This document shows, in pieces, positions 992 through 51,470 of a DNA stretch of 64,000 nucleotides. Position 1 is the first letter of the stretch; every line of letters starts with the position of its first letter. Location of the stretch: assembly GCA_950097015.1 (NCBI GenBank), contig CATNEN010000001.1, forward strand, positions 12,772,001-12,836,000, given 5' to 3'. Both the position numbers and the translations under genes were made by a program. The stretch is from Macrostomum hystrix. Taxonomy: Eukaryota; Animalia; Platyhelminthes. The notes below the pieces were generated by a model. It made no database searches, had not been told where the DNA came from, and was given only the letters and a program-made list of their open reading frames with translations.

Positions 992-2442
992 TTCGAAGTT
1001 CTGTTCTCCAGCAGCCGCAGCACCTGCTGATGTCCCATCTGCTCCGCCACCTGCGCGCACGTCTGGCCCCGACTGTCCCGATGACTCGCATCCGCTCCTC
1101 TGTCCATCAGACTCTTGGCTGCTCGCACGTGACCAGCCTCACAAGCTCGCGACAGAGCTGTCCGACCCTGACTGTCTTCAGCTCGCACTGACGCATCGAG
1201 ACACACCAGCCTCTCAATGAGCTCGTGATGACCTGCATCAGCTGCCAGCATGAGAGCAGTGGCTCCTGAGCTGTCGGGCACATCGACATGTTTTCTGCTG
1301 AATCGCTTGTCACGGAGGAGTGTGAGAGCCAGTGCGACATGGCCATGGGAGATGGAGACACAGAGCAGCTGTGTGATCTGAGCTGGCTGCATTCGAGACA
1401 GAGTCCGGCTGAGAACAGAGTTCCTGCCCTCAATGGCCATCGAGGCGGTGAAGCTGAGGACTTGGATGGACTGGAAGAGCCACTCGGGCTGAAGACCAAG
1501 TTCCTTGACGACATTTTCACGCAGATGAGAGCAAGCCGCGACTGCACAGACATAACGAAAATCTTGGTCAGCATCTGTCCCCAAGAAAAATTTGACCACT
1601 TCCAACTGACCATTAATTGCAGCAGGTTTCGCAGCCTCCTTGCAGCACTGATCTCTCAGTGTTTGGTCAGCAATTGTCGGCACCAAAAATTTGACCACTT
1701 CCCACTGACCATTGCTTACAGCAGATTCCGCAGCCTCCTTGCAGCACTGATCTCTCAGTGTTTGGTCAGCAATTGTCGGCACCAAAAATTTGACCACTTC
1801 CAACTGACCATTGTATGCAGCAGATTCCGCAGCCTCCTTGCAGCACTGATCTCTCAGTGGTTGGTCAGCAATTGTCAGCACCAAAAATTTGACCACTTCC
1901 CACTGACCATTGATTGCAGCAGGTCTCGCAGCTTCCTTGCAGCACTGATCTCTCAGTGTTTGGTCAGCAATTGTCGGCACCAAAAATTTGACCACTTCCC
2001 ACTGACCATTGCTTGCAGCAGGTCTCGCAGCCTCCTTGCAGCACTGATCTCTCAGTGTTTGGTCAGCAATTGTCGGCACCAAAAATTTGACCACTTCCAA
2101 CTGACGCTCACTAGCAGCAGATTTCGCAGCCTCCTTGCAGCACTGATCTCTCAGTGTTTGGTCAGCAATTGTCGCCACCAAAAATTTGACCACTTCCCAC
2201 TGACCTAATCTTGCAGCGGATTCCACAGCCTCCTTGCAGCACTGATCTCTCAGTGGTTGGTCAGCAACTGTCTGCACCAGAAGCTTCACAATTTCCCAGT
2301 GACGGTGATTCGCAGCAAGACGCCAATGCACTTCACACAGTCCATCTCTTCTGGAGCTGGATTTGATTGACTTCAGGTGATTTCGAACTTCGGTTTCCAG
2401 CCCCTGTGCTACAGCTCGCTCAAAGCTGATTTTCTGTCCCAT
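992..2442 (-). CDS. Gene A coding exon 1: MGQKIS start, 7 variable 33-aa ankyrin-like repeats and canonical ankyrin repeats of an ANK-Mab21/cGLR fusion
   Basis: ORF 988..2442 has AAxxGQxEVVKFLV repeats and canonical ANK motifs (GATALMLAADAGH, GRTALSRACEAGH). The ORF 'stop' lies inside a GTAAGT donor (991-986), phase 2. Confidence 0.9.
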
Positions 2443-2756: not shown

Positions 2757-3743
2757 AGCTGTGGATGGGATCAGCTGTGGATGGGATCAGCTGTGGATGG
2801 GATCAGCTGTGGATAGGATCATCTGTGGATGGTATCAGCTGTGGATTGGATCAGCCGTGGATGGGATCAGCTGTGGATGGGATCAGCTGTGGATAGGATC
2901 AGCCGTGGATGGTATCAGCTGTGGATGGGATCAGCTGTGGATGGGATCAGCTGTGGATAGGATCAGCCGTGGATGGTATCAGCTGTGGATGGGATCAGCT
3001 GTGGATAGGATCATCTGTGGATGGGATCAGCCGTGGATGGGATCAGCTGTGGATGGGATCAGCTGTGGATGGGATCAGCTGTGGATGGGATCAGCTGTGG
3101 ATAGGATCAGCCGTGGATGGTATCAGCTGTGGATGGGATCAGCTGTGGATAGGATCAGCTGTGGATGGGATCAGCTGTGGATGGGATCAGCTGTGGATGG
3201 GATCAGCTGTGGATAGGATCATCTGTGGATGGGATCAGCCGTGGATGGGATCAGCTGTGGATGGGATCAGCTGTGGATGGGATCAGCTGTGGATGGGATC
3301 AGCTGTGGATAGGATCAGCCGTGGATGGTATCAGCTGTGGATGGGATCAGCTGTGGATAGGATCAGCTGTGGATGGGATCAGCTGTGGATGGGATCAGCT
3401 GTGGATGGGATCAGCTGTGGATGGGATCAGCTGTGGATGGGATCAGCTGTGGATGGGAATAGCTGTGGATAGGATCAGCCGTGGATGGTATCAGCTGTGG
3501 ATGGGATCAGCTGTGGATAGGATCAGCTGTGGATGGGATCAGCTGTGGATGGGATCAGCTGTGGATGGGATCAGCTGTGGATGGGATCAGCTGTGGATGG
3601 TATCAGCTGTGGATGGGATCATCTGTGGATGGGATCAGCTGTGGATGGGATCAGCTGTGGATGGGATCAGCTGTGGATGGGATCAGCTGTGGATGGGATC
3701 AGCCGTGGATGGTATCAGCTGTGGATGGGATCATCTGTGGATG
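2757..3743. repeat. 16-bp minisatellite (GCTGTGGATGGGATCA)n upstream of gene A
   Basis: Direct reading of the sequence. Confidence 0.95.
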
Positions 3744-5630
3744 ATTAAATGCCCGTAGTGGGACTTTAATCCATCAGAATTGACTCCTGAATGGGCTGTT
3801 TAAAAAACGGATAGAAGATTAGCTTAAGATAGGATTTTTTCTATAGATGTGGGATCAGTCGGATCAGTCTTTTTAGCTTGGTCAGTCGGAGGGCGGACAG
3901 TCGGATGGCAGGTTGTTGTCTTGCAGACGATGAAAATCAAGCTTTGTTCTGCGGAGGCGAAAGTAGAAAGCTGTAAAAGTGCAAAGCCCATCAGGCCAGA
4001 GCTACTCACCCGCAGCTGGAATTGAGCTCAGTGGCGGCAGTTCTCAGCCTTCGTGAAACTCGGCAGCAGGTCGGCCCGCAGGAAATGTCTTCAGTTGAAG
4101 GCTCTGTTGAGTTTTCAGCTGCATTCATAGCCTGTGCCTGCCAAGCGGGTTTGGTGTGGCAGTCAGGTCGCATCTCATCTATGCTGCTAAATTGCTAAAT
4201 TTGCTGGCCCACAGTTGACCGGAAGCCAGCAGTGCCAGGTGAGAGAGAGATGGCAGACTGGGCGACTGGCAGACCAAAGCATGTGCAAAGCAGACCACTG
4301 CACATCTGCTTACTGGATATGCAGCAGCTATTCTGAACAACAAGCAGGTGAAACATCTGATAAGCCACTTGGCTGTGTGTTGCTGACTGCGTGCAGCTTC
4401 AATCAGCGACCAGAATCAGCACTGACTGAACAGGGTCGCTGAGCATCCATGGATTCTGATTACGAACATTTGTCTATCTTCCAGCGATGCTTGAATCAAA
4501 GCGAAAATTAACAGCGAACTTGTGCTAAACTGCAGTGGCTTTTGTCACGCAGAAGCAATTAGATCGCTCAGAAAGAAAGCTCAGAGAATGCTCGAGCAAG
4601 CTGAGTCACTTCTACTGTTTATTTAAACAAAAATATTCTGCCGAAAAATATGTACAAGAAATCTGCAACCCTGAGTTGAGACGTACTCAAAATCCTGTCA
4701 TTGCGTACTTTAGTCTGGGAAACTAGGCAATTCATATCTCAAATGTGTCACATCTCACAGCTCACATGCCTCGCATCTCACGTCTCACCTGTTTCACATT
4801 TCACATTTCTCATGGCACGCATTCTCTCAGACAACTCAAGCAATTCTACTCGGCCGGGTGGTTCCGGAAATCGATTCCCACTGTGGCGGGCGACAGTTCG
4901 TGGCTCTGTCACCGCGGGCCAATCGAATGCGCCGCGGTTCGCTGCAGGCCGGAGGTCGAGGCCGCTGCAAACCGACCCGAAGCTCCGGCCGTGTCGGCTA
5001 GCGAGCAGCTGCAGCTGCTGGCGTCGACGGAGGCGGCTCTCCGCGACTGGCAGGCGGAGCTGGAGACGCTGCGGCTTCGAGCGGCTCAAGGAGGCGCTGA
5101 CTGCGAGGGCTGTGGGTCTGGCCCTGCTCGGCAACTGTACGGCCTCGCTGAGGGACACGTGGGGGAGGGGCGAGGGTGAGAGGACTGGCAAGAGGGTGGG
5201 ACGTCAGGGAAGACGGTTAGATAACGGATGATGGCAGAGCTGAATCGCAGCAGGTCTGTGGGCTCTGGCTCACAATTATGTGGCAATAGACACGCAGACT
5301 CCTGCACACTCGCTCTCAGATACCGATTGCAGTAACTCACCTTAAACAGCGATGTACATCTGCACTGACCTACTCATTATAAGGCAGTGTACACACTTAC
5401 TGTGCCTTGAGGTTTGGTTCTCAAGAACGCGAATTGCACGACAAGCCTTTAATCCTTCTCTCGGTTACTGTACCCTAAAAATGGGTCAGTGGATTCGAGC
5501 TCATGACCTCGGTGTGAGAGTCGGGGGTGTTGTCCGCTCTGTCACTCACGCTCCAGGAAGGGAAAAAAGGGCAAAATTACTAGTGAGAAAAAGGAAATCA
5601 CGATTAAGCAGCCTATAGGCAAGCTGATGT

Positions 5631-6162
5631 GCTGATTGGTCAGAGTGGATGCTGATTGGTCAGAGTGGATGCAGATTGGTCAGAGTGGATGCTGATTGTT
5701 CAGAGTGGATGCTGATTGGTCAGAGTGGATGCTGATTGGTCAGAGTGGATGCTGATTGGTCAGAGTGGATGCTGATTGTTCAGAGTGGATGCTGATTGGT
5801 CAGAGTGGATGCTGATTGGTCAGAGTGGATGCTGATTGGTCAGAGTGGATGCTGATTGTTCAGAGTGGATGCTGATTGGTCAGAGTGGATGCTGATTGGT
5901 CAGAGTGGATGCTGATTGGTCAGAGTGGATGCTGATTGGTCAGAGTGGATGCTGATTGTTCAGAGTGGATGCTGATTGGTCAGAGTGGATGCTGATTGGT
6001 CAGAGTGGATGCCGATTGGTCAGAGTGGATGCCGATTGGTCAGAGTGGATGCCGATTGGTCAGAGTGGTTGCTGATTGGTCAGAGTGGATGCCGATTGGT
6101 CAGAGTGGATGCCGATTGGTCAGAGTGGTTGCTGATTGGTCAGAGTGGATGCCGATTGGTCA
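5631..6162. repeat. 20-bp minisatellite (GCTGATTGGTCAGAGTGGAT)n
   Basis: Direct reading of the sequence. Confidence 0.95.
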
Positions 6163-6719: not shown

Positions 6720-7817
6720 CTGTAGGTGATGTGTGACCAGTGTTTATTGGTCGCATATAGTCATCATGATCAGTATTTTTCGCTCAAAACCAAACAACAC
6801 AGCAGATTCAAATATTGAACAAGATAAAATATTTAATTATTTACAGGTGAGGAACTCCTAACAGAAGAAATCAGCCAATTACAATGCTGCAATCGTCAAT
6901 GACGGACACAAAAAGAACTCAGAGAGCAGAGCTGATGTTCTCACAGTTTCAGAGCATTCGTCAAGCTTATCGTCAAGTTTTTAGCCAAGCCAGTGCTCAG
7001 ATTGGCATTTACATAAGACAGCATGCGAAATGACTCTGCAACGACTGGGCAGAGCTCGACTTTGAACGAAAATCAAAACAAATCGAGTCACTGACGCTGC
7101 AGTTGTTGATAGTTTAATGAGCCTTTGACCGAGAGGGGCATACTTCCCTTTCTCACCAACTTCAGCCGACTTCCGTTGACTTTACGAAACCTTCTGTTAA
7201 ATTCGCTAGCTTCCGTTAACTTTATATAACTCCGTTAACTTTCGCTATCTCCGTAGCTTCATCAAACTTCCGTTAACTCCAGCTTACTTTCGTCTACTTC
7301 CGCTAAATTTCTTCAAATTCCCTCAGCTTTCTAGCCTTGCAGCAGCTGTTTTTGCTAAGGTTGCTGTTCCCTCAGCTTTCTAGCCTTGCAGCAGCTGTTT
7401 TTGCTAAGGTTGCTGTTCCCTCAGCTGGAAAACAGCGAAAACTGATTCTCTAAAATGAGAAACTTGCTTCTAAAAGCTTTGTCAAGATATCATACGCTCG
7501 TAAAATTAAAAAAGCTGGGATGAAAAGCAGAAAAATCTTACTTTAAATTTACGAAATTAAAAGTCGGTCGAATCAAAGTCCACCAACGTCAGACACCACA
7601 ACCTGCTGCATTTCACACTGCACCTCACACCACAACCATTATCCAGCGATGAGCTGAAAGAAACGCCCTGCCACCTTCAGCTTCATGACAGGCGGTGACT
7701 TCGGCAGCTGTCTTCACTAGCTGTCATGCGGCTTCCTGCCTGTGTGCTCGACCTGCAGTCGGACAGGACAGTCTCACTCTCTGTTTCCAAAGAAACAGAA
7801 TGTGATTGATTTGATTT

Positions 7818-9223
7818 TCATAGTCGCTCCAGCTTGTCCCTGACCCAGCGGATCTTCTCCTCATCCTGCGTCTCCATGGCGACGCGTCTCTCGTCCCTGA
7901 CGGTCTCCATCTGTCGCAGGCTGAACTCCACGTGCTCAACTTGGTCGCTGTAGTGAGCCAGAGTGAGCAGCTCCTCCAAGTCCGGGTCCTCTTGCAGCTC
8001 TGAGCGCCACGCATCGAAGTCGATTGCTGTGCGATTGCGGAGCAGCTCAGCTTGGAGACTCCAGCTCAGGCAGCGGAAGTTCACGTACAGGTGCTCAGAG
8101 CGAGGCTGTGACAGTCTGGCTGTGAGCAGAGTCTGCGTGAACTCGGGAAGGAATGTGAATCGAGGCGGAGTGTCTGCGGGGAGGCAGAACCTCCACGCCC
8201 AGTCTGAGTCTGATGGCAAAGTGATGTCTAAAGGTATGAGCCGATAATCTCCGATATCGTCAGGCCTCATTCCATTCCGAACTCTGTGACTCTGGAGCTC
8301 CATCGCGAGTCTCTTAGCCTCCTCGGAGTCTCCGAACTTCAAATGCGCCATGGCGGTCATGCACAGGGCGGCGCACTTGCACCACCGCAGCTGATGCAGG
8401 AGACTGAGCTGCCTCATCAGGGTTTCTCTGTCTGCAGACTGTGACTGCAGCTGAAGAACACAATGGTGCACCACACTGTACACGTCTGCTGGCATCTCAT
8501 AAAAAGCGCCAATTCCTACCCTAATCTGAGTGACAGCAGGCGGCGCTGTCAGTGGCAGCAGAGTGAATGGGTGAAAGTAGAAGTTCTCTGACTGCAGTGG
8601 TCTCAAAAGTCTCCTCATCTGCTCAACCACTCCGCCGATGTCGCTTCTCAGCTCTCTCAGTCGGTCTCGAACTCTCGCCTTCGTGTTGTCGAAGTCGCCG
8701 CCGATTCCAGCATTTTTGAAGTAGAGCGGAGCGTCGGGCATGAAGAAGTGCGGCATGCACTCATCGGGTGAGCTGCTTGAGTCGATGAACCTCAGCATCA
8801 TGTCGAGAGACTCCTTCAGCAGTGAGATCAGATTCTGAGGCTGCCAAGCTTCAGCATTTGGGTCTGTGCCATGCTTCTCCAGCATGAAGAAGAGCAGAGT
8901 CTTTGCATGGTAGGTCTTGAGTCCATGAGTGTCCAGAGTGAGTGGCAAATGTCTCTTGAAGATGAACTTGATGATTGAGAACAGCTGTCCCTGGACTGTG
9001 CTCAGCCGTCTCATGGCGTGTTTCTCTTGGAAGCTGAAGCTCACTCTGAGCTCATTGGTCTCATTAGGTCTGGTCGCCCTCACGAGGTGAACAGAAGTGT
9101 AGCTGTGTCCAATCAGCTGTTTGACTCTGTCCTCACAGAAGCCACTGCAGCACTGGATCGCATGGCACGTGTCCTGAGCAGGCCGCACACCACATGCCTT
9201 GGCTGAGACGGCAGGTTGGCTGC
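7818..9223 (-). CDS. Gene B coding exon 3: Mab-21 C-terminal lobe and helical/TPR-like tail (spliced product 1549 aa, or 1503 aa from MGQK)
   Basis: Acceptor ctgcag (AG at 9225-9224), phase 1. Mab-21 motifs QDTCHAI, LRVSFSFQEK, LKTYHAKTLLFF and MPHFFMP. Confidence 0.9.
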
Positions 9224-9653
9224 CTGCAGTGGGTGTTGACCAGTAGAGCAGATTTTTCGAAAATGTATCGATAAGAAATTGGCAGTTATGTTTGATATCA
9301 AGAAATTATAATTATTTCGCTCATGATATATTATAGCTCAAAACTATTATTTAGCTGACAGTTCAACTTTGAAATCGACAGCGACATTCGAAAAGTCAGA
9401 AAGAAATCCTAAATACTAAAGTATTTATTGCTTAACGAAGCAGCATGTTCTGGATGTGATCATTCGATTCCCAAGTTAAGGCATCCCATCGCTCAAACTG
9501 TACATCATAAGGTAGTGGAAAAAAATTGCACTGAAATGTGAACCAGCGGGAAATAATTATAAAAATGATAAATTTAACAACGAAATCCTAATTCACGCTC
9601 GTTAAACGGTGATAAAAATTATTACAAAAAAAAGAATACCAGGTGTGACTCAC

Positions 9654-10021
9654 CCGACCCCACTGGAACCTGAGCTTGACCCTCCATGACCCTCAGCTTC
9701 GTGGTACCTTCGCAGTTTCGGTTTCTCACGTCGCAGCCGCCCTCCAGATGCAACTCTTGCCCTTGAACCAGCACAGTCCAGTCAATGTCTGAGTCAGCCG
9801 CTGTCCTGCCGTTCACTTGCACCAGACTGTTGGCCCAGCCCTCTGCGTAGCTGCCTGTCATCCGCATCTTCCGGTTCTGAGTGAGGACTCGAGCGACTCC
9901 TTGCGGCCAGTAAGCCATTCTCTGCTGACACTCCGCTCTCTCCCGAGTGAATCCCGCCTTGCTGAGCAGTCGGTGCAGTTCCATACTGAGCTGCCTGTCC
10001 CGCTGTGAGTAGTCTCTGAGC
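9654..10021 (-). CDS. Gene B coding exon 2: cGLR NTase GS...DxD exon
   Basis: Acceptor cattccag (AG at 10023-10022) and donor GTGAGT (9653-9648). 368 nt, in frame. TGSYAEG...SDIDW present. Confidence 0.85.
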
Positions 10022-10663
10022 CTGGAATGACGGGTGTAATAAAGTCAGCGTGGCTTGCAGAGAGAGAAGTTTTTCAGAGCAGGCCAAGCCTAGCTCTCTA
10101 AATAAATATAAGTTTATTTCTCAGCCTGACCAGGCTGACCAATCAGCCGCTACCTCTGGGCGTGCACGCGCTCCAGAGTACGCACATGCGCGAGTACATT
10201 GCGAGAGAGAGAGAGAAAAATAACACCCTCAATCCCCTACTCTGCACTGATAGCGAAACGCAGTCACCACAACTCCTCACCACCACAACTCCAAACTCCA
10301 CAGTTCCTCACTGAGCTGCCTGTCCCGCTGTGAGTCGTCTCTGAGCCTGGAATGATGGGGAATTTAGTCAGCTGATGGGTTGTACACCTGCACAGACTGG
10401 CATCTCAAGCTGATCAGCTGAGAGTCCAGCTGCTGCTGCATTTAGACTGGCATCTCAAGCTGATCTGTTGAGGGGAATTTCCAATCAGAATCAGAAACTC
10501 ACTCAGCGAGACCCGAGTCGGTGCGGAGTCCAGCTGCCTTTTTCTTTTTTCTGCTGCTGGAAAAGGGCGCAGGTTTAGATTAGTTTTACCCGAAACGGTC
10601 TGCACGAGTACAGCAAGGGCAAAAAGCGGGTTAAAATATTTTAGAATATAAAAACGGACTTAC

Positions 10664-13539
10664 TTCGAAGTTCTGTTCTCCAGCAGCCGCAGCACCTGCT
10701 GATGTCCCAGCTGCTCCGCCACCTGCGCGCACGTCTGGCCCCGACTGTCCCGATGACTCGCATCCGCTCCTCTGTCCATCAGAGTCTTGGCTGCTCGCGC
10801 GTGACCCGCCTCACAAGCTCGCGACAGAGCTGTCCGACCCTGACTGTCTTCAGCTCGCACTGACGCACCGAGATCCACCAGCCTCTCGATGAGCTCGTGA
10901 TGACCTGCATCAGCTGCCAGCATGAGAGCAGTGGCTCCTGTGCTGTCGGGCACATCGACATGTTCTCTGCTGAAACGCTTGTCATGGAGGAGTGTGAGAG
11001 CCAGTGCGACATGGCCATGGGAGATGGAGACACCGAGCAGCTGTGTGATCTGAGCTGGCTGCATTCGAGACAGAGTCTGGCTGAGAACATCGTTCCTGCC
11101 CTCAATGGCCATCGAGGCGGTAAAGCTGAGGACTTGGATGGACTGGAAGAGCCACTCGGGCTGAAGTCCAAGTTCCTTGACGACATTTTCACGGAGATAA
11201 GAGCAAGCCACGACTGCACAGACATAACGAAAATCTTGGTCAGCATCTGTCGCCAACAAAAATTTGACCACTTCCAACTGACCATATCTTGCAGCAGATT
11301 CCGCAGCCTCCTTGCAGCACTGATCTCTCAGTGTTTGGTCAGCAATTGTCGGCACCAAAAATTTCACCACTTCCAACTGACCTCTGCTTAAAGCTGATTC
11401 CGCAGCCTCCTTGCAGCACTGATCTCTCAGTGTTTGGTCAGCAATTGTCGGCACCAAAAATTTGACCACTTCCCACTGGCCATTGATTGCAGCAGATTCC
11501 GCAGCCTCCTTGCAGAACTGATCTCTCAGTGTTTGGTCAGCAATTGTCGGCACCAAAAATTTGACCACTTCCAACTGACCATTTCTTGCAGCAGGTCTCG
11601 CAGCCTCCTTGCAGCACTGATCTTTCAGTGTTTGGTCAGCAATTGTCGGCACCAAAAATTTGACCACTTCCCACTGGCCATTGATTGCAGCAGATTCCGC
11701 AGCCTCCTTGCAGCACTTATCTCTCAGTGTTTGGTCAGCAATTGTCGGCACCAAAAATTTGACCACTTCCCACTGGCCATTGATTGCAGCAGGTCTCGCA
11801 GCCTCCTTGCAGCACTGATCTCTCAGTGTTTGGTCAGCAATTGTCGGCACCAAAAATTTCACCACTTCCAACTGACCATTGTATGCAGCAGATTCCGCAG
11901 CCTCCTTGCAGCACTGATCTTTCAGTGTTTGGTCAGCAATTGTCGGCACCAAAAATTTGACCACTTCCAACTGACCATTTCTTGCAGCAGGTCTCGCAGC
12001 CTCCTTGCAGCACTGATCTTTCAGTGTTTGGTCAGCAATTGTCGGCACCAAAAATTTGACCACTTCCAACTGACGCTCACTAGCAGCAGATTTCGCAGCC
12101 TCCTTGCAGCACTGATCTTTCAGTGTTTGGTCAGCAATTGTCGGCACCAAAAATTTGACCACTTCCCACTGACCATTTCTTGCAGCAGGTCTCGCAGCCT
12201 CCTTGCAGCACTGATCTTTCAGTGTTTGGTCAGCAATTGTCGGCACCAAAAATTTGACCACTTCCAACTGACCATTTCTTGCAGCAGGTCTTGCAGCCTC
12301 CTTGCAGCACTGATCTTTCAGTGTTTGGTCAGCAATTGTCGGCACCAACAATTCGACCACTCCCCACTGATGATTGATTGCAGCATATTCCGCAGCCTCC
12401 TTGCAGCACTTATCTCTCAGTGTTTGGTCAGCAATTGTCGGCACCAAAAATTTGACCACTTCAAACTGACCATATCTTGCAGCAGGTCTCGCAGCCTCCT
12501 TGCAGAACTGATCTTTCAGTGTTTGGTCGGCAATTGTCGGCACCAAAAATTTGACCACTTCTAACTGACCCTTCCTTGCAGCAGATTCCGCAGCCTCCTT
12601 GCAGCACTTATCTCTCAGTGTTTGGTCAGCAATTGTCGGCACCAAAAATTTGACCACTTCCCACTGGCCATTGATTGCAGCAGATTTCGCAACCTCCTTG
12701 CAGCACTGATCTCTCAGTGTTTGATCAGCAATTGTCGGCACCAAAAATTTGACCACTTCCCACTGATGATTGATTGCAGCATATTTCACAGCCTCCTTGC
12801 AGCACTGATCTTTCAGTGTTTGGTCAGCAATTGTCGGCACCAAAAATTTGACCACTTCCAACTGACCATTGATTGCAGCATATTTCACAGCCTCCTTGCA
12901 GCACTGATCTTTCAGTGTTTGGTCAGCAATTGTCGGCACCAAAAATTTGACCACTTCCCACTGGCCATTGATTGCAGCAGATTTCGCAACCTCCTTGCAG
13001 CACTGATCTCTCAGTGTTTGATCAGCAATTGTCGGCACCAAAAATTTGACCACTTCCCACTGACCTAATCTTGCAGCAGATTCCGCAGCCTCCTTGCAGC
13101 ACTGACCTCTCAGTGTTTGGTCAGCAATTGTCGGCACCAAAAATTTGACCACTTCCCACTGACCATTGATTGCAGCGGATTCCACAGCCTCCTTGCAGCA
13201 CTGATCTCTCAGTGTTTGGTCCGCAACTGTCTGCACCAGAAGTTTCACAATTTCCCAGTGACGGTGATTCGCAGCAAGACGCCAATGCACTTCACACAGT
13301 CCATCTCTTCTGGAGCTGCTTTTGATTGATCTTAAGTGATTTCGAACTTCGGTTTTCAGCCCCTCTGCTACAGCTCGCTCAAAGCTGATTTTCTGTCCCA
13401 TCTGTCTATTCCTCCATCTGTCGATCCATCCATCTGTCAATGCATTTATCCAATCAAGGATTATCCGGAAATGGTATCTAGTAAGGATGGATTCAAGGAT
13501 AAATTTAAGCAACAAAACAAAAAATCCTGTCAGTTCCAT
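10664..13539 (-). CDS. Gene B coding exon 1: optional 46-aa hydrophobic leader, MGQKIS at 13401, 20 variable ankyrin-like repeats and canonical ANK
   Basis: ORF 10660..13539, with 20 CCKE/FCKE units counted. GTAAGT donor at 10663-10658, phase 2. Confidence 0.88.
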
Positions 13540-13945: not shown

Positions 13946-14031
13946 TGTGGATGGGATCAGCTGTGGATGGGATCAGCTGTGGATGGGATCAGCTGTGGAT
14001 GGGATCTGCTGTGGATGGGATCCGCTGTGGA
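13946..14031. repeat. Short copy of the 16-bp minisatellite upstream of gene B
   Basis: About 5 units. Confidence 0.9.
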
Positions 14032-23127: not shown

Positions 23128-24380
23128 CTCTTTGTCTGGTTCTCCAGCAGCCGCAGCACCTGCTGATGTCCCAGCTGCTCCGCCACCTGCGCGCACGTCT
23201 GGCCCCGACTGTCCCGATGACTCGCATCCGCTCCTCTGTCCATCAGAGTCTTGGCTGCTCGCACGTGACCCGCCTCACAAGCTCGCGACAGAGCTGTCCG
23301 ACCCTGACTGTCTTCAGCTCGCACTGACGCACCGAGATCCACCAGCCTCTCAATGAGCTCGTGATGACCTACATCAGCTGCCAGCATGAGAGCAGTGGCT
23401 CCTGTGCTGTCGGGCACATCGACATATTCTCTGCTGAATCGCTCGTCACGGAGGAGTGTGACAGCCAGTGCGACATGGCCATGGGAGATGGAGACACAGA
23501 GCAGCTGTGTGATCTGAGCTGGCTGCATTCGAGACAGAGTCTGGCTGAGAACATCGTTCCTGCCCTCAATGGCCATCGAGGCGGTGAAGCTGAGGACTTG
23601 GATGGACTGGAAGAGCCACTCGGGCTGAAGTCCAAGCTCCTTGACGACATTTTCACGGAGATAAGAGCAAGCCGCGACTGCACAGACATAACGAAAATCT
23701 TGGTCAGCATCTGTCCCCAAGAAAAATTTGACCACTTTCAACTGACCACATCTTGCAGCCCATTCGGCAGCCTCCTTGCAGCACTGATCTCTCAGTGTTT
23801 GGTCAGCAATTTTCGGCACCAAAAATTTGACCACTTCCAACTGACCCTTACTTGCCGCAGATTTCGCAGCCTCCTTGCAGCACTGATCTCTCAGTGTTTG
23901 GTCAGCAATTGTCGGCACCAAAAATTTGACCACTTCCCACTGACCATTGATTGCAGCAGATGCCGCAGCCTCCTTGCAGTACCCATCTCTCAGAGTTTGG
24001 TCAGCAATTGTCGGCACCAAAAATTTGACCACTTCCAACTGACCACTTCTTGCAGCAGGTCTCGCAGCATCCTTGCAGCACTGATCTCTCAGAGTTTGGT
24101 CAGCAATTGCCGGCACCAAAAATTTGACCACTTCCAACTGACCATTGATTGCAGCAGATTCCGCAGCCTCCTTGCAGCACTGATCTCTCAGTGTTTGGTC
24201 CGCAACTGTCTGCACCAGAAGTTTCACAATTTCCCAGTGACGGTGATTCGCAGCAAGACGCCAATGCACATTACACAGTCCATCTCTTCTGGAGCTGCTT
24301 TTGATTGATTTTAAGTGATTTCGAACTTCGGTTTCCAGCCCCTCTGCTACAGCTCGCTCAAAGCTGATTTTCTGTCCCAT
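23128..24380 (-). CDS. Gene C coding exon 1: 5 variable ankyrin-like repeats and canonical ANK
   Basis: ORF 23022..24380. Donor GTGGGT at 23127-23122, phase 2. The ORF tail after ..QTKR is intron read-through. Confidence 0.88.
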
Positions 24381-24477
24381 TTGTATGTTGCTTGGAGTTT
24401 TTAGAAACCTTCTTGACTTTCTTGATCTCTGAAAGTTTGATAAAAAAACTAATTAAAAAGGTCATAAAAATTATCAT

Positions 24478-24852
24478 GTGGATGGGATCAGCTGTGGATG
24501 GGATCAGCTGTGGATGGGATCAGCTGTGGATGGGATCAGCTGTGGATGGGATCAGCTGTGGATGGGATCAGCTGTGGATAGGATCAGCCGTGGATGGTAT
24601 CAGCTGTGGATGGGATCAGCTGTGGATAGGATCAGCTGTGGATGGGATCAGCTGTGGATGGGATCAGCTGTGGATAGGATCAGCTGTGGATGGGATCAGC
24701 TGTGGATGGGATCAGCTGTGGATGGGATCAGCTGTGGATGGGATCAGCTGTGGATGGGATCAGCTGTGGATGGGATCAGCATTGGATGGGATCAGCTGTG
24801 GATGGGATCAGCCGTGGATGGTATCAGCTGTGGATGGGATCAGCTGTGGATG
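24478..24852. repeat. 16-bp minisatellite upstream of gene C
   Basis: Direct reading of the sequence. Confidence 0.95.
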
Positions 24853-28910: not shown

Positions 28911-29204
28911 TCAGCTTGATGACAGGCGAGGACCTCGGCAGCTGTCTTCACTAGCTGTCATGCGGCTTCGGACGGTCTCAGTCTCCGTTTCCATAGAAAC
29001 TGCATGCGATCGATTTGATTTCCTTAGTCGCTCCAGCTTCTCCCTGACACAGCGGATCTTCTCCTCATCCAGCGTCTCCATGGCGACGCGTCTCTCGTCC
29101 CTGACGGTCTCCATCTGTCGCAGGTTGATCTCCGCGTGCTCAACTTAGTCGCTGTATTGAGCCAGAGTGAGCAGCTCCTCCAAGTCCGGGTCCTCTTGCA
29201 GCTC
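28911..29204 (-). pseudogene. 3' remnant of a sixth cGLR paralogue (end of exon 3)
   Basis: ELQEDPDLEELLTLAQYSD*VEHAEINLRQMETVRDERRVAMET.. with in-frame TAA at 29145-29147. Homology ends abruptly at 29204. Confidence 0.85.
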
Positions 29205-37889: not shown

Positions 37890-39538
37890 CTCTTTGTCTG
37901 GTTCTCCAGCAGCCGCAGCACCTGCTGATGTCCCAGCTGCTCCGCCACCTGCGCGCACGTCTGGCCCCGACTGTCCCGATGACTCGCATCCGCTCCTCTG
38001 TCCATCAGAGTCTTGGCTGCTCGCACGTGACCCGCCTCACAAGCTCGCGACAGAGCTGTCCGACCCTGACTGTCTTCAGCTCGCACTGACGCACCGAGAT
38101 CCACCAGCCTCTCAATGAGCTCGTGATGACCTACATCAGCTGCCAGCATGAGAGCAGTGGCTCCTGAGCTGTCGGGCACATCGACATGTTCTCTGCTGAA
38201 TCGCTCGTCATGGAGGAGTGTGAGAGCCAGTGCGACATGGCCATGGGAGATGGAGACACAGAGCAGCTGTGTGATCTGAGCTGGCTGCATTCGAGACAGA
38301 GTCTGGGCGAGAACAGAGTTCCCGCCCTCAATGGACATCGAGTCGGTGAAGCTGAGGACTTGGATGGACTGGAAGAGCCACTCGGGCTGAAGTCCAAGGA
38401 AGGCGACGACATTTTCACGGAGATAAGAGCAAGCCGCGACTGCACAGACATAACGAAAATCTTGGTCAGCATCTGTCCCCAAGAAAAATTTGACCACTTC
38501 CAACTGACCACTTCTTGCAGCCCATTCGGCAGCCTCCTTGCAGCACTGATCTCTCAGTGTTTGGTCAGCAATTTTCGGCACCAAAAATTTGACCACTTCC
38601 AACTGACCCTCACTTGCAGCAGATTTCGCAGCCTCCTTGCAGCACTGATCTCTCAGAGTTTGGTCAGCAATTGTCGGCACCAAAAATTTGACCACTTTCA
38701 ACTGACCATCAAATGCAGCAGATTCCGCAGCCTCCTTGCAGCACTGATCTCTCAGTTTTTCATCAGCAATTGTCGGCACCAAAAATTTGACCACATCTAA
38801 CTGACCCTTCCTTGCAGCCCATTCCGCAGCCTCCTTGCAGCACTGATCTCTCAGTTTTTCATCAGCAATTGTCAGCACCAAAAATCTGACCACTTCCAAC
38901 TGACCACTTCTTGCAGCAGGTCTCGCAGCATCCTTGCAGCACTGATCTCTCAGAGTTTGGTCAGCGATTGTCGGCACCAAAAATTTGACCACTTCCAACT
39001 GACCTAATCTTGCAGCAGATTCCGCAGCCTCCTTGCAGCACTGACCTCTCAGTGTTTGGTCAGCAATTGCCGGCACCAAAAATTTGACCACTTCCAACTG
39101 ACCTAATCTTGCAGCAGATTCCGCAGCCTCCTTGCAGCACTGACCTCTCAGTGTTTGGTCAGCAATTGCCGGCACCAAAAATTTGACCACTTCTAACTGA
39201 ACTAATCTTGCAGCAGATGCCGCAGCCTCCTTGCAGCACTGATCTCTCAGTGGTTGGTGAGCAATTGTCGGCACCAAACATTTGACCACTTCCAACTGAC
39301 CTAATCTTGCAGCGGATTCCACAGCCTCCTTGCAGCACTGATCTCTCAGTGTTTGGTCCGCAACTGTCTGCACCAGAAGTTTCACAATTTCCCAGTGACG
39401 GTGATTCGCAGCAAGACGCCAATGCACTTCACACAGTCCATCTCTTCTGGAGCTGCTTTTGATTGATTTTAAGTGATTTCGAACTGTGGTTTCCAGCCCC
39501 TCTGCTACAGCTCGCTCAAAGCTAGTTTTCTGACCCAT
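37890..39538 (-). CDS. Gene D coding exon 1: 9 variable ankyrin-like repeats and canonical ANK
   Basis: ORF 37886..39538. The stop lies inside a GTGAGT donor (37889-37884), phase 2. Confidence 0.9.
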
Positions 39539-48821: not shown

Positions 48822-51470
48822 CTACTCAGCATCTGTCCCCAAGAAAAATTTGACCACTTCCAACTGACCACTTCTTGCAGCCTCCTTGCAGCACTGATCT
48901 CTCAGTATTTTGTCAGCAATCGTCGGCACCAAAAATTTGACCACTTCTAACTGACCCTTCCGTGCAGCAGATTCCACAGCCTCCTTGCAGCACTGATCTC
49001 TCAGTGTTTGTTCAGCAATTGTCGGCACCAAAAATTTGACCACTTCCCACTGACCTAATCTTGCAGCAGATTCCGCAGCCTCCTTGCAGCACTGATCTCT
49101 CAGTGGTTGGTCAGCAATTGTCGGCACCAAAAATTTGACCACTTCTAACTGACCCTCACTTGCAGCAGATTCCGCAGCCTTCTTGCAGCACTGATCTCTC
49201 AGTATTTTGTCAGCAATCGTCGGCACCAAAAATTTGACCACTTCCAAATGACCCTTTCTTGCAGCGGATTCCGCAGCCTTCTTGCAGCACTGATCTCTCA
49301 GTATTTTGTCAGCAATTGTCGGCACCAAAAATTTGACCACTTCCCACTGACCTAATCTTGCAGCAGATTCCGCAGCCTCCTTGCAGCACTGATCTCTCAG
49401 TGGTTGGTCAGCAATTGTCGGCACCAAAAATTTGACCACTTCTAACTGACCCTCACTTGCAGCAGATTCCGCAGCCTTCTTGCAGCACTGATCTCTCAGT
49501 ATTTTGTCAGCAATCGTCGGCACCAAAAATTTGACCACTTCCAAATGACCCTCGATTGCAGCAGATTTCACAGCCTCCTTGCAGCACTGATCTCTCAGTG
49601 TTTGTTCAGCAATTGTCGGCACCAAAAATTTGACCACTTCCCACTGACCTAATCTTGCAGCAGATTCCGCAGCCTCCTTGCAGCACTGATCTCTCAGTGG
49701 TTGGTCAGCAATTGTCGGCACCAAAAATTTGACCACTTCTAACTGACCCTCACTTGCAGCAGATTCCGCAGCCTTCTTGCAGCACTGATCTCTCAGTATT
49801 TTGTCAGCAATCGTCGGCACCAAAAATTTGACCACTTCCAAATGACCCTCGATTGCAGCAGATTTCACAGCCTCCTTGCAGCACTGATCTCTCAGTGTTT
49901 GTTCAGCAATTGTCGGCACCAAAAATTTGACCACTTCCCACTGACCTAATCTTGCAGCAGATTCCGCAGCCTCCTTGCAGCACTGATCTCTCAGTATTTT
50001 GTCAGCAATTGTCGGCACCAAAAATTTGACCACTTCTAACTGACCCTTCCTTGCAGCAGATTCCGCAGCCTCCTTGCAGCACTGATCTCTCAGTATTTTG
50101 TCAGCAATTGTCGGCACCAAAAATTTGACCACTTCCCACTGACCATTGATTGCAGCAGATGCCGCAGCCTCCTTGCAGCACTGATCTCTCAGTATTTTGT
50201 CAGCAATTGTCGGCACCAAAAATTTGACCACTTCTAACTGACCCTTCCTTGCAGCAGATTCCGCAGCCTCCTTGCAGCACTGATCTCTCAGTGTTTGGTC
50301 AGCAATTGTCGGCACCAAAAATTTGACCACTTCCCACTGACCATTGATTGCAGCAGATGCCGCAGCCTTCTTGCAGCACTGATCTCTCAGTTTTTCATCA
50401 GCAATTGTCGGCACCAAAAATTTGACCACTTCTAACTGACCCTTCCATGCAGCAGATGCCGCAGCCTTCTTGCAGCACTGATCTCTCAGTTTTTCATCAG
50501 CAATTGTCGGCACCAAAAATTTGACCACTTCTAACTGACCCTTCCTTGCAGCAGATTCCGCAGCCTCCTTGCAGCACTGATCTCTCAGTGTTTGGTCAGC
50601 AATAGTCGGCACCAAAAATTTGACCACTTCCCACTGACCATTGATTGCAGCAGATGCCGCAGCCTTCTTGCAGCACTGATCTCTCAGTTTTTCATCAGCA
50701 ATTGTCGGCACCAAAAATTTGACCACTTCTAACTGACCCTTCCTTGCAGCAGATTCCGCAGCCTCCTTGCAGCACTGATCTCTCAGTGTTTGGTCAGCAA
50801 TTGTCGGCACCAAAAATTTGACCACTTCCCACTGACCATTGATTGCAGCAGATGCCGCAGCCTCCTTGCAGCACTGATCTCTCAGTTTTTCATCAGCAAT
50901 TGTCGGCACCAAAAATTTGTCCACTTCCCACTGACTATTCCATGCAGCATATTCCGCAGCCTTCTCGCAGCACTGATCTCTCAGTGTTTGGTCAGCAATT
51001 GTCGGCACCAAAAATTTGACCACTTCCCACTGACTATTCCATGCAGCAGATTCCGCAGCCTTCTTGCAGCACTGATCTCTCAGTTTTTCATCAGCAATTG
51101 TCGGCACCAAAAATTTGACCACTTCTAACTGACCCTTCCTTGCAGCAGATTCCGCAGCCTTCTTGCAGCACTGATCTCTCAGTATTTTGTCAGCAATTGT
51201 CGGCACCAAAAATTTGACCACTTCTAACTGACCCTTCCTTGCAGCAGATTCCGCAGCCTCCTTGCAGCACTGATCTCTCAGTGTTTGGTCCGCAACTGTC
51301 TGCACCAGAAGTTTCACAATTTCCCAGTGACGGTGATTCGCAGCAAGACGCCAATGCACTTCACACAGTCCATCTCTTCTGGAGCTGCTTTTGATTGATT
51401 TTAAGTGATTTCGAACTTCGGTTTCCAGCCCCTCTACTACAGCTCGCTCAAAGCTAATTTTCTGACCCAT
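48822..51470 (-). CDS. Gene E exon 1, truncated: stand-alone 882-aa ORF of 25 variable ankyrin-like repeats (canonical ANK part and splice donor deleted)
   Basis: Uninterrupted ORF ending ..FFLGTDAE* at a deletion junction (~48820-48825) that joins directly to intron-1 sequence. Confidence 0.8.
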   Translation of the reverse strand: MGQKISFERAVVEGLETEVRNHLKSIKSSSRRDGLCEVHWRLAANHRHWEIVKLLVQTVADQTLRDQCCKEAAESAARKGQLEVVKFLVPTIADKILRDQCCKKAAESAARKGQLEVVKFLVPTIADEKLRDQCCKKAAESAAWNSQWEVVKFLVPTIADQTLRDQCCEKAAEYAAWNSQWEVDKFLVPTIADEKLRDQCCKEAAASAAINGQWEVVKFLVPTIADQTLRDQCCKEAAESAARKGQLEVVKFLVPTIADEKLRDQCCKKAAASAAINGQWEVVKFLVPTIADQTLRDQCCKEAAESAARKGQLEVVKFLVPTIADEKLRDQCCKKAAASAAWKGQLEVVKFLVPTIADEKLRDQCCKKAAASAAINGQWEVVKFLVPTIADQTLRDQCCKEAAESAARKGQLEVVKFLVPTIADKILRDQCCKEAAASAAINGQWEVVKFLVPTIADKILRDQCCKEAAESAARKGQLEVVKFLVPTIADKILRDQCCKEAAESAARLGQWEVVKFLVPTIAEQTLRDQCCKEAVKSAAIEGHLEVVKFLVPTIADKILRDQCCKKAAESAASEGQLEVVKFLVPTIADQPLRDQCCKEAAESAARLGQWEVVKFLVPTIAEQTLRDQCCKEAVKSAAIEGHLEVVKFLVPTIADKILRDQCCKKAAESAASEGQLEVVKFLVPTIADQPLRDQCCKEAAESAARLGQWEVVKFLVPTIADKILRDQCCKKAAESAARKGHLEVVKFLVPTIADKILRDQCCKKAAESAASEGQLEVVKFLVPTIADQPLRDQCCKEAAESAARLGQWEVVKFLVPTIAEQTLRDQCCKEAVESAARKGQLEVVKFLVPTIADKILRDQCCKEAARSGQLEVVKFFLGTDAE

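What the first reader, a model, noticed from the sequence alone, without database searches (positions are those of the whole stretch)
11260..13260. 'Natural DARPin' code: 99-bp repeats with a near-invariant frame and two hypervariable residue clusters
Seen: the consensus is Q[LW]EVVKFLVPTIADQTLRDQCCKEAA-xx-AA-xx-G. The framework is almost identical even at the DNA level. The first pair takes ES/RP/KS/KY/EY/EW/AS/KP and the second takes IN/RL/RK/RY/RN/SE/YN/SN/WN/WK/FD/IE/RS/RC/SK across genes, with a lesser variable site at QT/QP/EK/KI. Established: the AAxxG positions at the end of ankyrin helix 1 line the concave binding face and are among those randomised in DARPins. Inference: concerted evolution of the scaffold plus diversifying selection on contact residues gives a modular recognition code, conceptually like TALE RVDs or lamprey VLR modules. 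A one-repeat-one-unit polymer ligand such as nucleic acid cannot be excluded. The usual DxxGxTPLH hairpin is replaced by DQTLRDQCCKE, so this is an atypical ankyrin subtype.
Basis: partly seen in the sequence, partly recalled or inferred. Interest (0 to 1): 0.9.

Follow-up and report, generated by a model that had tools for sequence, protein, structure and literature searches.

The report
Hypervariable ankyrin arrays on cGAS-like genes
Five neighbouring flatworm genes begin with 5 to 25 nearly identical 33-residue ankyrin-type repeats that differ mainly at a few residues of one helix and are spliced to a cGAS-like enzyme domain; this matches the pattern of fungal immune receptors, but what the repeats bind is unknown.

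Summary
The window holds 65 regular 99-bp units, plus one irregular unit, in five minus-strand genes. Framework DNA identity is 95.6%; identity at the four most variable codons is 61.6%.

The repeats are ankyrin homologues that align without gaps to DARPins. AlphaFold predicts that the usual beta-hairpin is replaced by a 17-residue helix. The second variable pair matches DARPin positions 13/14. The first pair matches positions 9/10, and the DARPin hairpin positions 2, 3 and 5 are invariant here.

Each array is the first exon of an ankyrin–Mab-21 (cGAS-like) fusion gene. This rests on a consensus splice donor, GT..AG joints in exon-restricted (RNA-like) contigs, and Macrostomum lignano gene models.

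Tests that do not depend on recombination show excess diversity at unit codons 32, 31 and 27. Codons 28, 16, 2 and 15 are only suggestive. My M2a likelihood test gave LRT 50.7, but a recombining null simulation also reached 54, so it is not decisive.

The closest known analogue is the highly conserved ankyrin, TPR and WD repeats of fungal NLRs. I found no support for a TALE-like code.

The scan had already found this family on other DNA of the same genome (s1-085017, s1-258406, s1-392119, s1-085026) and read it the same way.

The parts
11281..13260 (-). Gene 2 array: 20 in-frame 99-bp (33-aa) ankyrin-type units. This is the finding itself.
   Evidence: Pfam Ank_2 E 1.3e-119
13261..13401 (-). 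N-terminal 47 residues starting MGQKIS, which fits the Gly2/Ser6 N-myristoylation motif. The same start occurs in all five genes and as MGQxxS in M. lignano relatives. The ORF upstream to 13539 is probably not translated.
   Evidence: Myristoylation is inferred from the motif only.
10663..11280 (-). Rest of the first exon: one degenerate unit (QLEVVKFLLATDADQDF...), a helical linker and canonical TPLH-type ankyrin repeats. It ends ...LLENRTS with the donor AA|gtaagt at 10664/10663.
   Evidence: (best Ank stretches at 839-931)
10557..10663 (-). Intron 1 (107 nt, GT..AG).
   Evidence: Joint 10556/10664 in runs X2, X4 and X5 but not in the DNA-like run X1.
10503..10556 (-). 54-nt microexon encoding a basic linker (NSRKKKKAAGLRTDSGLA), read in the phase left by exon 1.
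   Evidence: Joints; sequence; same linker pattern in the M. lignano consensus.
9655..10030 (-). Exon with the putative nucleotidyltransferase core (…MTGSYAEGW…DSDIDWTV…). The acceptor ttccag|G is in frame with the microexon.
   Evidence: joint 9653/9222 in X4. No Pfam or PDB sequence hit on its own. The G-S and D-x-D motifs were read by eye.
7821..9221 (-). Exon with the Mab-21 C-terminal (HhH/H2TH-like) domain and a long C-terminal tail.
   Evidence: Pfam PF20266 at 31.6 bits, cut-off 24.1; weak PDB hit to cGAS-like receptor 1, 8gjy, E 0.0024.
1609..2301 (-). Gene 1 array, 7 units (ORF 988-2442).
23745..24239 (-). Gene 3 array, 5 units (ORF 23022-24380). This ankyrin part was modelled.
38507..39397 (-). 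Gene 4 array, 9 units (ORF 37886-39538).
48855..51329 (-). Gene 5 array, 24 regular units plus 1 irregular unit. It contains a 3-unit higher-order repeat. The exon is cut off near 48828 and lacks the C-terminal ankyrin cap.

Best explanation
The 99-bp units encode an atypical, hairpin-less ankyrin-type solenoid. Each unit is a 10-residue helix, a short turn and a 17-residue helix.

The solenoid is the N-terminal domain of proteins that start with an N-myristoylation-type motif. Through a 54-nt microexon it is spliced to a Mab-21/cGAS-like nucleotidyltransferase domain.

The genes sit in a young tandem cluster and belong to a family of at least about 45 genes in this Macrostomum-like flatworm genome. 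Unequal crossing-over and gene conversion, within and between paralogues, keep the framework nearly identical and change the unit number (5 to 25 in this window, up to about 47 elsewhere).

A few residues stay far more diverse than neutral drift allows. They lie at the C-terminal end of the long helix, at canonical ankyrin positions 9, 10, 13 and 14. Positions 17 and 30/31 also vary.

Most likely this patch is a germline-encoded, rapidly reshuffled ligand-binding surface, more probably for protein or peptide than for nucleic acid. It would act as the sensor or regulatory domain of the attached enzyme, as the highly conserved ANK/TPR/WD repeats do in fungal NLRs.

Shown here: the repeat anatomy, ankyrin homology, the predicted helix extension, the fusion by splicing, family size, homogenisation, and excess diversity at codons 32, 31 and 27. 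Inferred: ligand binding, the nature of the ligand, myristoylation, enzyme activity and any immune role.
For: Anatomy and variability.

Ankyrin homology: Pfam, gapless DARPin alignment, Foldseek matches to DARPins and ankyrin-B/R at probability 1.0.

Hairpin replaced by a long helix: AlphaFold on gene 3 (array pLDDT 90-96) and on M. lignano P0003.

Fusion to the Mab-21 domain:
- Consensus donor and in-frame acceptors.
- GT..AG joints 10664>10556, 10502>10345 and 9653>9222 in exon-restricted contigs.
- M. lignano gene models with Ank plus PF20266, and the same linker.
- M. lignano Mab-21 homologues were included in the published cGLR screen (PMC9980059 supplement).

Family size.

Homogenisation:
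- Framework pS is 0.054 within genes and 0.056 between genes, similar to paralogue pS of 0.04-0.075.
- The same four-residue cassettes recur in different genes, and gene 5 has a 3-unit higher-order repeat.
- M. lignano arrays have a species-specific framework.

Excess diversity:
- pN at codons 27/28/31/32 is 0.29-0.52, against framework pS of 0.055.
- Ewens allele-number test: codon 32 P 9e-8, codon 31 P 2e-4.
- Single-codon neutral coalescent simulations: codon 32 P<2.5e-4, codon 31 P 8e-4, codon 27 P 1e-3.
- Positions 31/32 are the two most variable positions in three (L003, L004, L006) of five other paralogous arrays; position 32 also ranks first in L002.

Precedent for this design in immune receptors: PMC4986451.
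Against: - No ligand, expression response, enzyme activity or between-individual polymorphism was tested.
- Solvent exposure could not be measured because the tools give no model coordinates. A helical-moment test over the whole long helix was not significant (p 0.32).
- L/W at unit position 2 covaries with residues 31-32 (MI 0.73 bits, p<0.0005). Part of the variation may therefore be compensatory packing rather than ligand contact.
- The M2a test is unreliable here. One of four recombining null simulations gave LRT 54.
- The within-codon syn/nonsyn binomial test was not significant.
- Codons 28, 16, 2 and 15 are not individually significant.
- pN/pS is about 1 or more in the non-repeat part too, so constraint is generally weak.
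- The nucleotidyltransferase core has no significant sequence match, and its AlphaFold model has low confidence.
- No clear STING ligand-binding domain was found in the genome.
Confidence: 0.55

Rival explanations
1. No selection for diversity. The arrays are very young products of unit amplification. The variable positions are simply unconstrained surface residues, or old variants that escaped homogenisation by chance.
For: Paralogues and units are only about 4-7% diverged at synonymous sites, and pN/pS is about 1 in the non-repeat region. The within-codon binomial test is not significant. The M2a LRT can be reproduced by recombination alone. Codons 28, 16, 2 and 15 are not individually significant.
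Against: Neutral sites should show pN close to pS, about 0.055. Codons 31, 32 and 27 show 0.37-0.52. Codon 32 has 9 amino-acid alleles where 1.6 are expected, and codon 31 has 6 after the irregular unit is dropped. Both exceed neutral coalescent simulations. The same positions lead in other arrays of this genome and vary in M. lignano.
Confidence: 0.15
2. The array is a regulatory or scaffolding domain of the enzyme, for example autoinhibition, oligomerisation or membrane tethering, and is not a variable recognition surface. The variable residues would tune packing or self-interaction.
For: Position 2 (canonical Leu17, a core position) covaries with residues 31-32. The start fits a myristoylation motif and the linker is basic, which suggests membrane tethering. 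The same genome also carries homogenised ankyrin arrays on TRP channels, according to earlier scan notes (not tested here).
Against: Packing residues are normally conserved. Here the small-residue face (L17, C21, C22, A25, A26, A29, A30) is invariant and the opposite face varies. Unit number ranges from 5 to 25 between near-identical paralogues, which is hard to reconcile with a fixed intramolecular partner.
Confidence: 0.2
3. A modular one-repeat-one-unit code for a polymer such as nucleic acid, working as TALE RVDs do.
For: The periodic variable dipeptides in an otherwise identical repeat look superficially like RVDs.
Against: There are 29 four-residue combinations, from 8 first pairs and 16 second pairs, in 65 units, not a small alphabet. 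The arrays are acidic to neutral, with pI 5.1-7.5 and net charge of -0.7 to +0.1 per unit. The fold is ankyrin-like. From general knowledge, such repeats stack about 10 Å apart and typically bind proteins or peptides.
Confidence: 0.03
4. An assembly artefact: collapsed or chimeric tandem repeats create apparent variation.
For: Long near-identical arrays are hard to assemble. Array reads were not inspected, because read laying turns long repeats away and I laid only the flanks.
Against: All five arrays stay in frame over up to 2.5 kb. Variation is codon-specific, not random. The same architecture occurs in dozens of loci and in independently assembled and annotated M. lignano proteins.
Confidence: 0.02

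Closest known systems
High-internal-conservation (HIC) ANK/TPR/WD repeats of fungal NOD-like receptors (Podospora HET-E/D/R, Pa_3_8560; Dyrka et al. 2014, PMC4986451)
   Same: Repeat units are nearly identical at the DNA level and repeat number is variable. Units are shuffled within and between paralogues. A few hypervariable positions lie on the inner helix or concave side. The repeat domain is attached to an immune-type signalling domain, in a large lineage-specific family.
   Different: The host is an animal (flatworm). The attached module is a Mab-21/cGAS-like nucleotidyltransferase, not a NACHT or NB-ARC NTPase, and the repeats are N-terminal rather than C-terminal. The ankyrin unit lacks the beta-hairpin. 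Protein identity between units (76-83%) is slightly under that paper's 85% criterion. Allelic polymorphism was not tested.
DARPins and other designed ankyrin libraries (e.g. 6mol, 2qyj NI3C; ANK-N5C 4qfv/4o60, PMC4308713)
   Same: 33-residue period and gapless alignment. A near-consensus framework with diversity at helix-1 positions 13/14.
   Different: DARPin positions 2, 3, 5 and 33 (the beta-turn) are Q, C, K and R/K here and almost invariant. Variation also occurs at canonical positions 9/10 (His-Leu of TPLHL), 17 and 30/31. G4 and the TPLH motif are replaced by C-KEAA, and the hairpin is predicted to be helical.
cGAS-like receptors fused to ankyrin repeats (Li et al. 2023, PMC9980059: ANK-cGLR and TPR-cGLR architectures, e.g. 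in Stylophora pistillata)
   Same: Ankyrin repeats joined to a Mab-21-type nucleotidyltransferase. M. lignano homologues of the Mab-21 part are on that paper's screening list.
   Different: As far as I could read, that work does not describe homogenised arrays or hypervariable positions. [quoted passage not shown] Activity of the flatworm proteins is not reported in the text I could search.
Lamprey variable lymphocyte receptors (VLR)
   Same: A solenoid repeat receptor whose diversity lies in cassette-like modules on the concave face.
   Different: VLRs have an LRR fold and are assembled somatically from flanking cassettes. Here the fold is ankyrin-like, the diversity is germline, and somatic rearrangement is neither seen nor tested.
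TALE repeats (RVD code)
   Same: Near-identical tandem repeats of about 33-34 residues with a hypervariable dipeptide.
   Different: TALEs use a small RVD alphabet with a one-repeat-one-base DNA reading, and have a different fold. Here there are 29 combinations, the arrays are acidic to neutral, and the fold is ankyrin-like.

Membership tests
Ankyrin repeat superfamily | 33-residue repeat matching the ankyrin profiles above curated cut-offs | tested here: met
   Ank_2 at 391.5 bits (cut-off 27.3) with 17 stretches; Ank, Ank_3, Ank_4 and Ank_5 also above cut-off. Gapless alignment to DARPins, E 2e-29.
Ankyrin repeat superfamily | Stacked helix-turn-helix solenoid fold | tested here: met
   AlphaFold array pLDDT 90-96 with alternating 10- and 17-residue helices. 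Foldseek top hits are DARPins, ankyrin-B/R and NOMPC at probability 1.0, TM 0.45-0.49.
Ankyrin repeat superfamily | TPLH motif and beta-hairpin/finger loop between repeats | tested here: not met
   G-x-TPLH is replaced by C-K-EAA-x. The region is predicted as one continuous helix over unit positions 15-31. This makes it an atypical subtype. The C-terminal repeats of the same protein are canonical.
High-internal-conservation repeat receptors (fungal NLR type) | Units at least 85% identical over at least 100 residues (Dyrka 2014 criterion) | tested here: inconclusive
   DNA identity between units is 89-93% and framework amino-acid identity 91.5%. Whole-unit amino-acid identity is 76-83%, just under the criterion.
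High-internal-conservation repeat receptors (fungal NLR type) | A few hypervariable sites under diversifying selection on the binding face | tested here: inconclusive
   Excess diversity is robust at codons 32, 31 and 27 and suggestive at 28, 16 and 2. The M2a LRT of 50.7 is not robust to recombination. Exposure is inferred only from the DARPin register and helical geometry.
High-internal-conservation repeat receptors (fungal NLR type) | Repeat-number variation and unit exchange between family members | tested here: met
   5, 7, 9, 20 and 24-25 units in paralogues that are about 4% diverged at synonymous sites. Cassettes are shared between genes, and 25 of 66 units have their nearest DNA neighbour in another gene. 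Variation between individuals was not tested.
High-internal-conservation repeat receptors (fungal NLR type) | NACHT/NB-ARC NOD module | tested here: not met
   No NOD domain is present. The partner is Mab-21_C with a putative NTase core. It therefore works like a HIC receptor but is not an NLR.
cGAS-like receptors (Mab-21 / cGLR) | Mab-21 C-terminal domain | tested here: met
   PF20266 at 31.6 and 30.9 bits, cut-off 24.1. Weak match to cGLR1 8gjy (E 0.0024) and MAB21L1 5eog.
cGAS-like receptors (Mab-21 / cGLR) | NTase core with G-S and [DE]-h-[DE] catalytic motifs and a third acidic residue | tested here: inconclusive
   GSYAEGW and DSDID were seen by eye in the exon at 9655-10030 and are invariant in M. 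lignano relatives. There was no significant profile or PDB hit for that exon. The AlphaFold model of this part has pLDDT 30-45. The third acidic residue was not located.
cGAS-like receptors (Mab-21 / cGLR) | Ligand-activated synthesis of a nucleotide second messenger, with a STING-type receptor downstream | not testable with these tools
   Only a sub-threshold STING_LBD hit (25.6 bits, cut-off 27) was found, and its ORF has no Pfam match.
TALE-like modular code | A small alphabet of variable dipeptides, each reading one unit of a polymer | tested here: not met
   8 x 16 pairs give 29 combinations in 65 units. The arrays are not basic. The ligand register is untestable here.

The most novel reading that the evidence does not exclude
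Macrostomid flatworms have evolved a germline-encoded, combinatorially diversified receptor family. In it, hairpin-less ankyrin solenoids of 5 to about 50 shuffled units act as specificity domains of membrane-tethered cGAS-like nucleotidyltransferases (and, in M. lignano, of kinases). This would be an animal counterpart of fungal HIC-NLRs and a new way of coupling variable-repeat recognition to nucleotide second-messenger signalling.
Probability: 0.35. Interest if true: 0.85.

Novelty: new variant of a known kind. Interest (0 to 1): 0.62.

Why it matters
cGAS-like receptors are a major animal sensor family, but the ligands of most of them are unknown, and flatworms were thought largely to lack them.

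This is a large, fast-turnover family whose sensor domain looks like a natural binder library. It has a fixed scaffold, shuffled units and a few diversified helix residues. If it really is a sensor, repeat-based generation of recognition diversity, known from fungal NLRs, would extend to animal nucleotide-signalling receptors.

It would also offer a tractable test system. Variable residues or units could be swapped while reading out enzyme activity, and M. lignano allows RNAi and transgenesis.

The hairpin-less, Cys-Cys/Ala-Ala-packed ankyrin unit may interest repeat-protein engineers as well.

Tried and rejected
1. I wrote my own PAML-like M1a/M2a fit on a fixed FastTree topology. It gave LRT 50.7 for the window units and 16-22 for three other arrays. 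Null simulations with three independently coalescing segments gave LRTs of 5.4, 1.4, one numerical failure and 54. I therefore do not use this LRT as evidence.
2. A tree-based SLAC-like count gave rates at codons 31/32/27 of 2.6-4 times the synonymous baseline, but the within-codon binomial test was not significant.
3. A helical 'variability moment' over the whole 18-residue stretch was not significant (p 0.32). Only the C-terminal half (24, 27, 28, 31, 32 against 25, 26, 29, 30) shows a clean two-face pattern. Positions 15/16 form a second cluster at the other end of the helix.
4. I folded M. lignano P0003 to test the cGAS fold. The ankyrin part was good, but the Mab-21 part had pLDDT 30-45, so I made no fold search on it.
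5. The STING search gave only a sub-threshold hit.
6. The ESM Atlas look-up returned only generic ankyrin clusters.
7. The NTase exon alone gave nothing in Pfam or PDB.
Exons were searched separately by reference, so no search or fold of the joined window protein was made.
9. The acceptor motif is duplicated (about 10346 and about 10030). The short contigs therefore cannot show which copy the microexon joins. Only the 10030 copy keeps the frame open.
Full report
**What is there**

Tandem Repeats Finder reports a 99-bp array at 11236-13262 (20.5 copies, 90% matches). Four sister arrays lie at 1564-2279, 23700-24287, 38462-39382 and 48877-51314. Each lies in a long minus-strand ORF.

Translated in register, the five ORFs hold 7, 20, 5, 9 and 25 units of 33 residues. 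The last unit of gene 5 is irregular, leaving 65 regular ones. The consensus is Q[LW]EVVKFLVPTIADQTLRDQCCKEAAxxAAxxG.

Per-codon entropy is as follows:

| Unit position | Entropy (bits) |
|---|---|
| 32 | 2.40 |
| 31 | 1.90 |
| 27 | 1.66 |
| 16 | 1.42 |
| 28 | 1.22 |
| 2 | 1.10 |
| 15 | 1.01 |
| all others | at most 0.81 |

The third site takes QT/KI/EK/QP. Framework nucleotide identity between units is 95.6%, against 61.6% at the four hypervariable codons.

**What kind of repeat**

Pfam scores the protein as ankyrin (Ank_2 at 391.5 bits). A seven-unit stretch aligns without gaps to DARPins (6mol_A, E 2e-29). That alignment fixes the register:

| Unit position | Canonical ankyrin/DARPin position |
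|---|---|
| D19 | D1 |
| C21, C22 | 3, 4 (C22 replaces Gly4) |
| KEAA (23-26) | x-T-P-L (5-8) |
| 27/28 | 9/10 (His-Leu of TPLHL) |
| 31/32 | 13/14 |
| 2 | Leu17 |
| 15/16 | 30/31 |

The first pair does not. The DARPin-randomised hairpin positions 2, 3 and 5 are the invariant Q, C and K here.

I modelled the gene 3 ankyrin part with AlphaFold (417 aa, mean pLDDT 83, array 90-96). Each unit is predicted as a 10-residue helix (unit positions 2-11), a three-residue turn and a 17-residue helix (unit positions 15-31). The canonical beta-hairpin is thus replaced by an N-terminal extension of helix 1. The M. lignano relative P0003 gives the same pattern. Foldseek still places the model among DARPins, ankyrin-B/R and NOMPC (probability 1.0, TM 0.45-0.49).

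On the long helix, L17, C21, C22, A25, A26, A29 and A30 form an invariant small-residue face. Positions 24, 27, 28, 31 and 32 lie within a 140° arc on the other side. Positions 15/16 form a separate cluster at the N-terminal end of the helix. I could not compute solvent exposure because the tools return no coordinates. The 'one surface stripe' is therefore plausible but not shown.

**Context: the arrays are first exons of ankyrin–cGAS-like fusion genes**

The ankyrin ORF of gene 2 ends ...ACT TCG AA|gtaagt, a consensus donor. Downstream on the same strand lie two more exons in every repeat of the cluster:
- One exon encodes ...GSYAEGW...DSDID..., the putative nucleotidyltransferase core.
- The other carries a Mab-21 C-terminal domain (PF20266, 31.6 bits against a cut-off of 24.1).

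I laid Logan contigs of four runs on 7700-10800. Run X1 covers exons and introns alike. Runs X2, X4 and X5 cover essentially only the predicted exons, so they look RNA-derived. They carry minus-strand GT..AG joints 10664>10556 and 10502>10345, and X4 carries 9653>9222.

The first joint uses exactly the predicted donor. It defines a 54-nt microexon that encodes a basic linker. The acceptor motif is duplicated at about 10346 and about 10030, and only the 10030 copy keeps the frame open into the NTase exon. Short contigs cannot decide between the two copies.

Independent support comes from Macrostomum lignano. The closest database proteins (60-72% identical in the non-repeat part) are annotated models carrying Ank plus Mab-21_C. 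Some carry a protein kinase as well, and their consensus contains the same linker. M. lignano homologues of the Mab-21 part are on the screening list of the cGLR survey by Li et al. (PMC9980059 supplement). That paper also notes that ANK-cGLR fusions exist.

Exons were searched separately.

The genome (220 Mb, 42 contigs) holds at least about 45 loci with the family's C-terminal ankyrin cap, in ORFs of up to 1,810 residues.

**Concerted evolution**

The four complete paralogues differ by pS 0.005-0.049 in the non-repeat C-terminal region. The N-terminal 47 codons have mean pS 0.075. Framework pS between units is 0.054 within genes and 0.056 between genes.

All units therefore coalesce about as recently as the genes do, and a unit is no closer to units of its own gene than to units of other genes. 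For 25 of 66 units the nearest DNA neighbour lies in another gene. The same four-residue cassettes (ES.RL, KS.SE, RP.RS, AS.IN and others) recur in different genes. Gene 5 has a three-unit higher-order repeat with identical copies.

M. lignano arrays share the CC/AAxxAAxxG design but have their own framework residues. That is the signature of homogenisation within each lineage.

**Is diversity at the variable sites more than neutral?**

Pairwise, framework pS is 0.055 and framework pN is 0.041. pN at codons 27, 28, 31 and 32 is 0.37, 0.29, 0.46 and 0.52.

My own M1a/M2a fit gave LRT 50.7 (omega2 4.6; NEB above 0.95 at codons 2, 27, 28, 31 and 32). Three other arrays in the genome gave LRTs of 16-22. 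I then ran null simulations without positive selection, using three independently coalescing segments. They gave LRTs of 5.4, 1.4, one numerical failure and 54. In this setting the LRT proves nothing.

I therefore used single-codon tests that recombination cannot distort, taking theta from framework pS.

| Codon | Amino-acid alleles (Ewens test) | Ewens P | Heterozygosity simulation P |
|---|---|---|---|
| 32 | 9 (1.6 expected) | 9e-8 | <2.5e-4 |
| 31 | 6 | 2e-4 | 8e-4 |
| 27 | 4 | not significant after Bonferroni | 1e-3 |
| 16 | 4 | not significant after Bonferroni | 0.013 |
| 2 | 3 | not significant after Bonferroni | 0.025 |
| 28 | 4 | not significant after Bonferroni | 0.065 |
| 15 | 3 | not significant after Bonferroni | 0.10 |

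The heterozygosity results come from neutral coalescent simulations.

Positions 31/32 are also the two most variable in three of five other arrays I extracted, and position 32 ranks first in a fourth (L002). Excess diversity is thus solid at 32, 31 and 27 and suggestive elsewhere.

Synonymous diversity is also raised at codons 31 and 2. That fits old, maintained variant classes, but it does not exclude local mutation-rate effects.

**Code or binder library?**

There are 29 four-residue combinations in 65 units. The two pairs are statistically associated (MI 1.14 bits) but far from fixed.

L/W at position 2 tracks residues 31-32: IN is followed by W and RK/SE by L (MI 0.73, p<0.0005). Position 2 is a core position in canonical ankyrins, so part of the variation may be compensatory packing.

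The arrays are acidic to neutral (pI 5.1-7.5), unlike nucleic-acid-reading solenoids. Nothing supports a one-repeat-one-unit code.

The close analogue is the fungal NLR repeats with high internal conservation. There, ANK, TPR and WD units are homogenised, vary in number, and carry a few positively selected sites on the concave side (PMC4986451). My literature searches found no description of this design in an animal or on a cGLR.

**Verdict**

The array is best read as the diversified, probably ligand-binding, N-terminal domain of a lineage-specific ankyrin–cGAS-like receptor family.

It works like a fungal HIC-NLR repeat domain but is not an NLR. It is an ankyrin homologue but an atypical, hairpin-less one. 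Ligand, enzyme activity, myristoylation and immune role are all inferred.

Earlier follow-ups in this scan reached the same reading for other members of the family elsewhere in this genome. That is agreement, not independent evidence.

Noticed in passing
window 48780-48960: Gene 5's ankyrin exon breaks off after ...ACAGATGCTGA near 48828, where gene 2 continues CCAAGATTTTCG. Unrelated sequence follows, and the 246-residue C-terminal cap is absent from the window, although the NTase (47125-46742) and Mab-21_C (46290-45064) exons are present. The last unit (48855-48953) also has an internal deletion. The gene is probably rearranged or disrupted, yet 24 regular units remain open.
   Followed up: partly
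window 10300-10350 and 9990-10035: The acceptor and first ~36 nt of the NTase exon (ttccag|GCTCAGAGAC.ACTCACAGCGGGACAGGCAGCTCAGT) occur twice, about 315 bp apart. The upstream copy runs into a stop. RNA-like contigs were placed on the upstream copy, but they are too short to tell the two apart.
   Followed up: partly
window 10663-11400, 991-1728, 23127-23864, 37889-38626: The non-repeat C-terminal ankyrin region also evolves fast between paralogues, with pN/pS of about 1 or more. The extreme case is gene 3 against gene 4: pS 0.005, pN 0.038.
   Followed up: partly
P0017, P0025, P0027, P0040 (M. lignano): Relatives with the same ankyrin cap are fused to a protein kinase domain. P0017 has Ank, Mab-21_C and Pkinase together. 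The effector end of the family therefore appears modular.
   Followed up: no
window 2757-3743, 13946-14031, 24477-24852, 39852-40598, 51785-52159 (and 5630-6162, 26333-27785, 42459-42771): Each duplication unit carries the same minisatellites. A 16-mer array (AGCTGTGGATGGGATC) lies just upstream of every ankyrin gene, and 20-mer and 15-mer arrays lie between genes, with very different copy numbers per unit.
   Followed up: no
window 29025-29216: An isolated 64-residue fragment of the Mab-21_C exon tail (84% identical), with no ankyrin or NTase exon beside it. It looks like a gene relic.
   Followed up: no
L010 (G000:C2:9103029-9106496): This is the only STING ligand-binding-domain candidate in the genome, and it is sub-threshold (25.6 bits, cut-off 27). 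Its 307-aa ORF has no Pfam match. A downstream receptor for any cyclic nucleotide is therefore not evident.
   Followed up: partly
window unit positions 21-22 in every unit: A Cys-Cys pair is invariant in almost every unit and conserved in M. lignano. On the predicted long helix it lies on the small-residue packing face, which gives a ladder of paired cysteines along the solenoid. Whether it binds metal, is acylated or is purely structural is unknown.
   Followed up: no
window 55850-58258: A 2.4-kb (CTCTCTCCACC)n microsatellite with extreme strand skew (GC skew -0.97), followed by several other kilobase-scale short-period arrays up to the window end.
   Followed up: no
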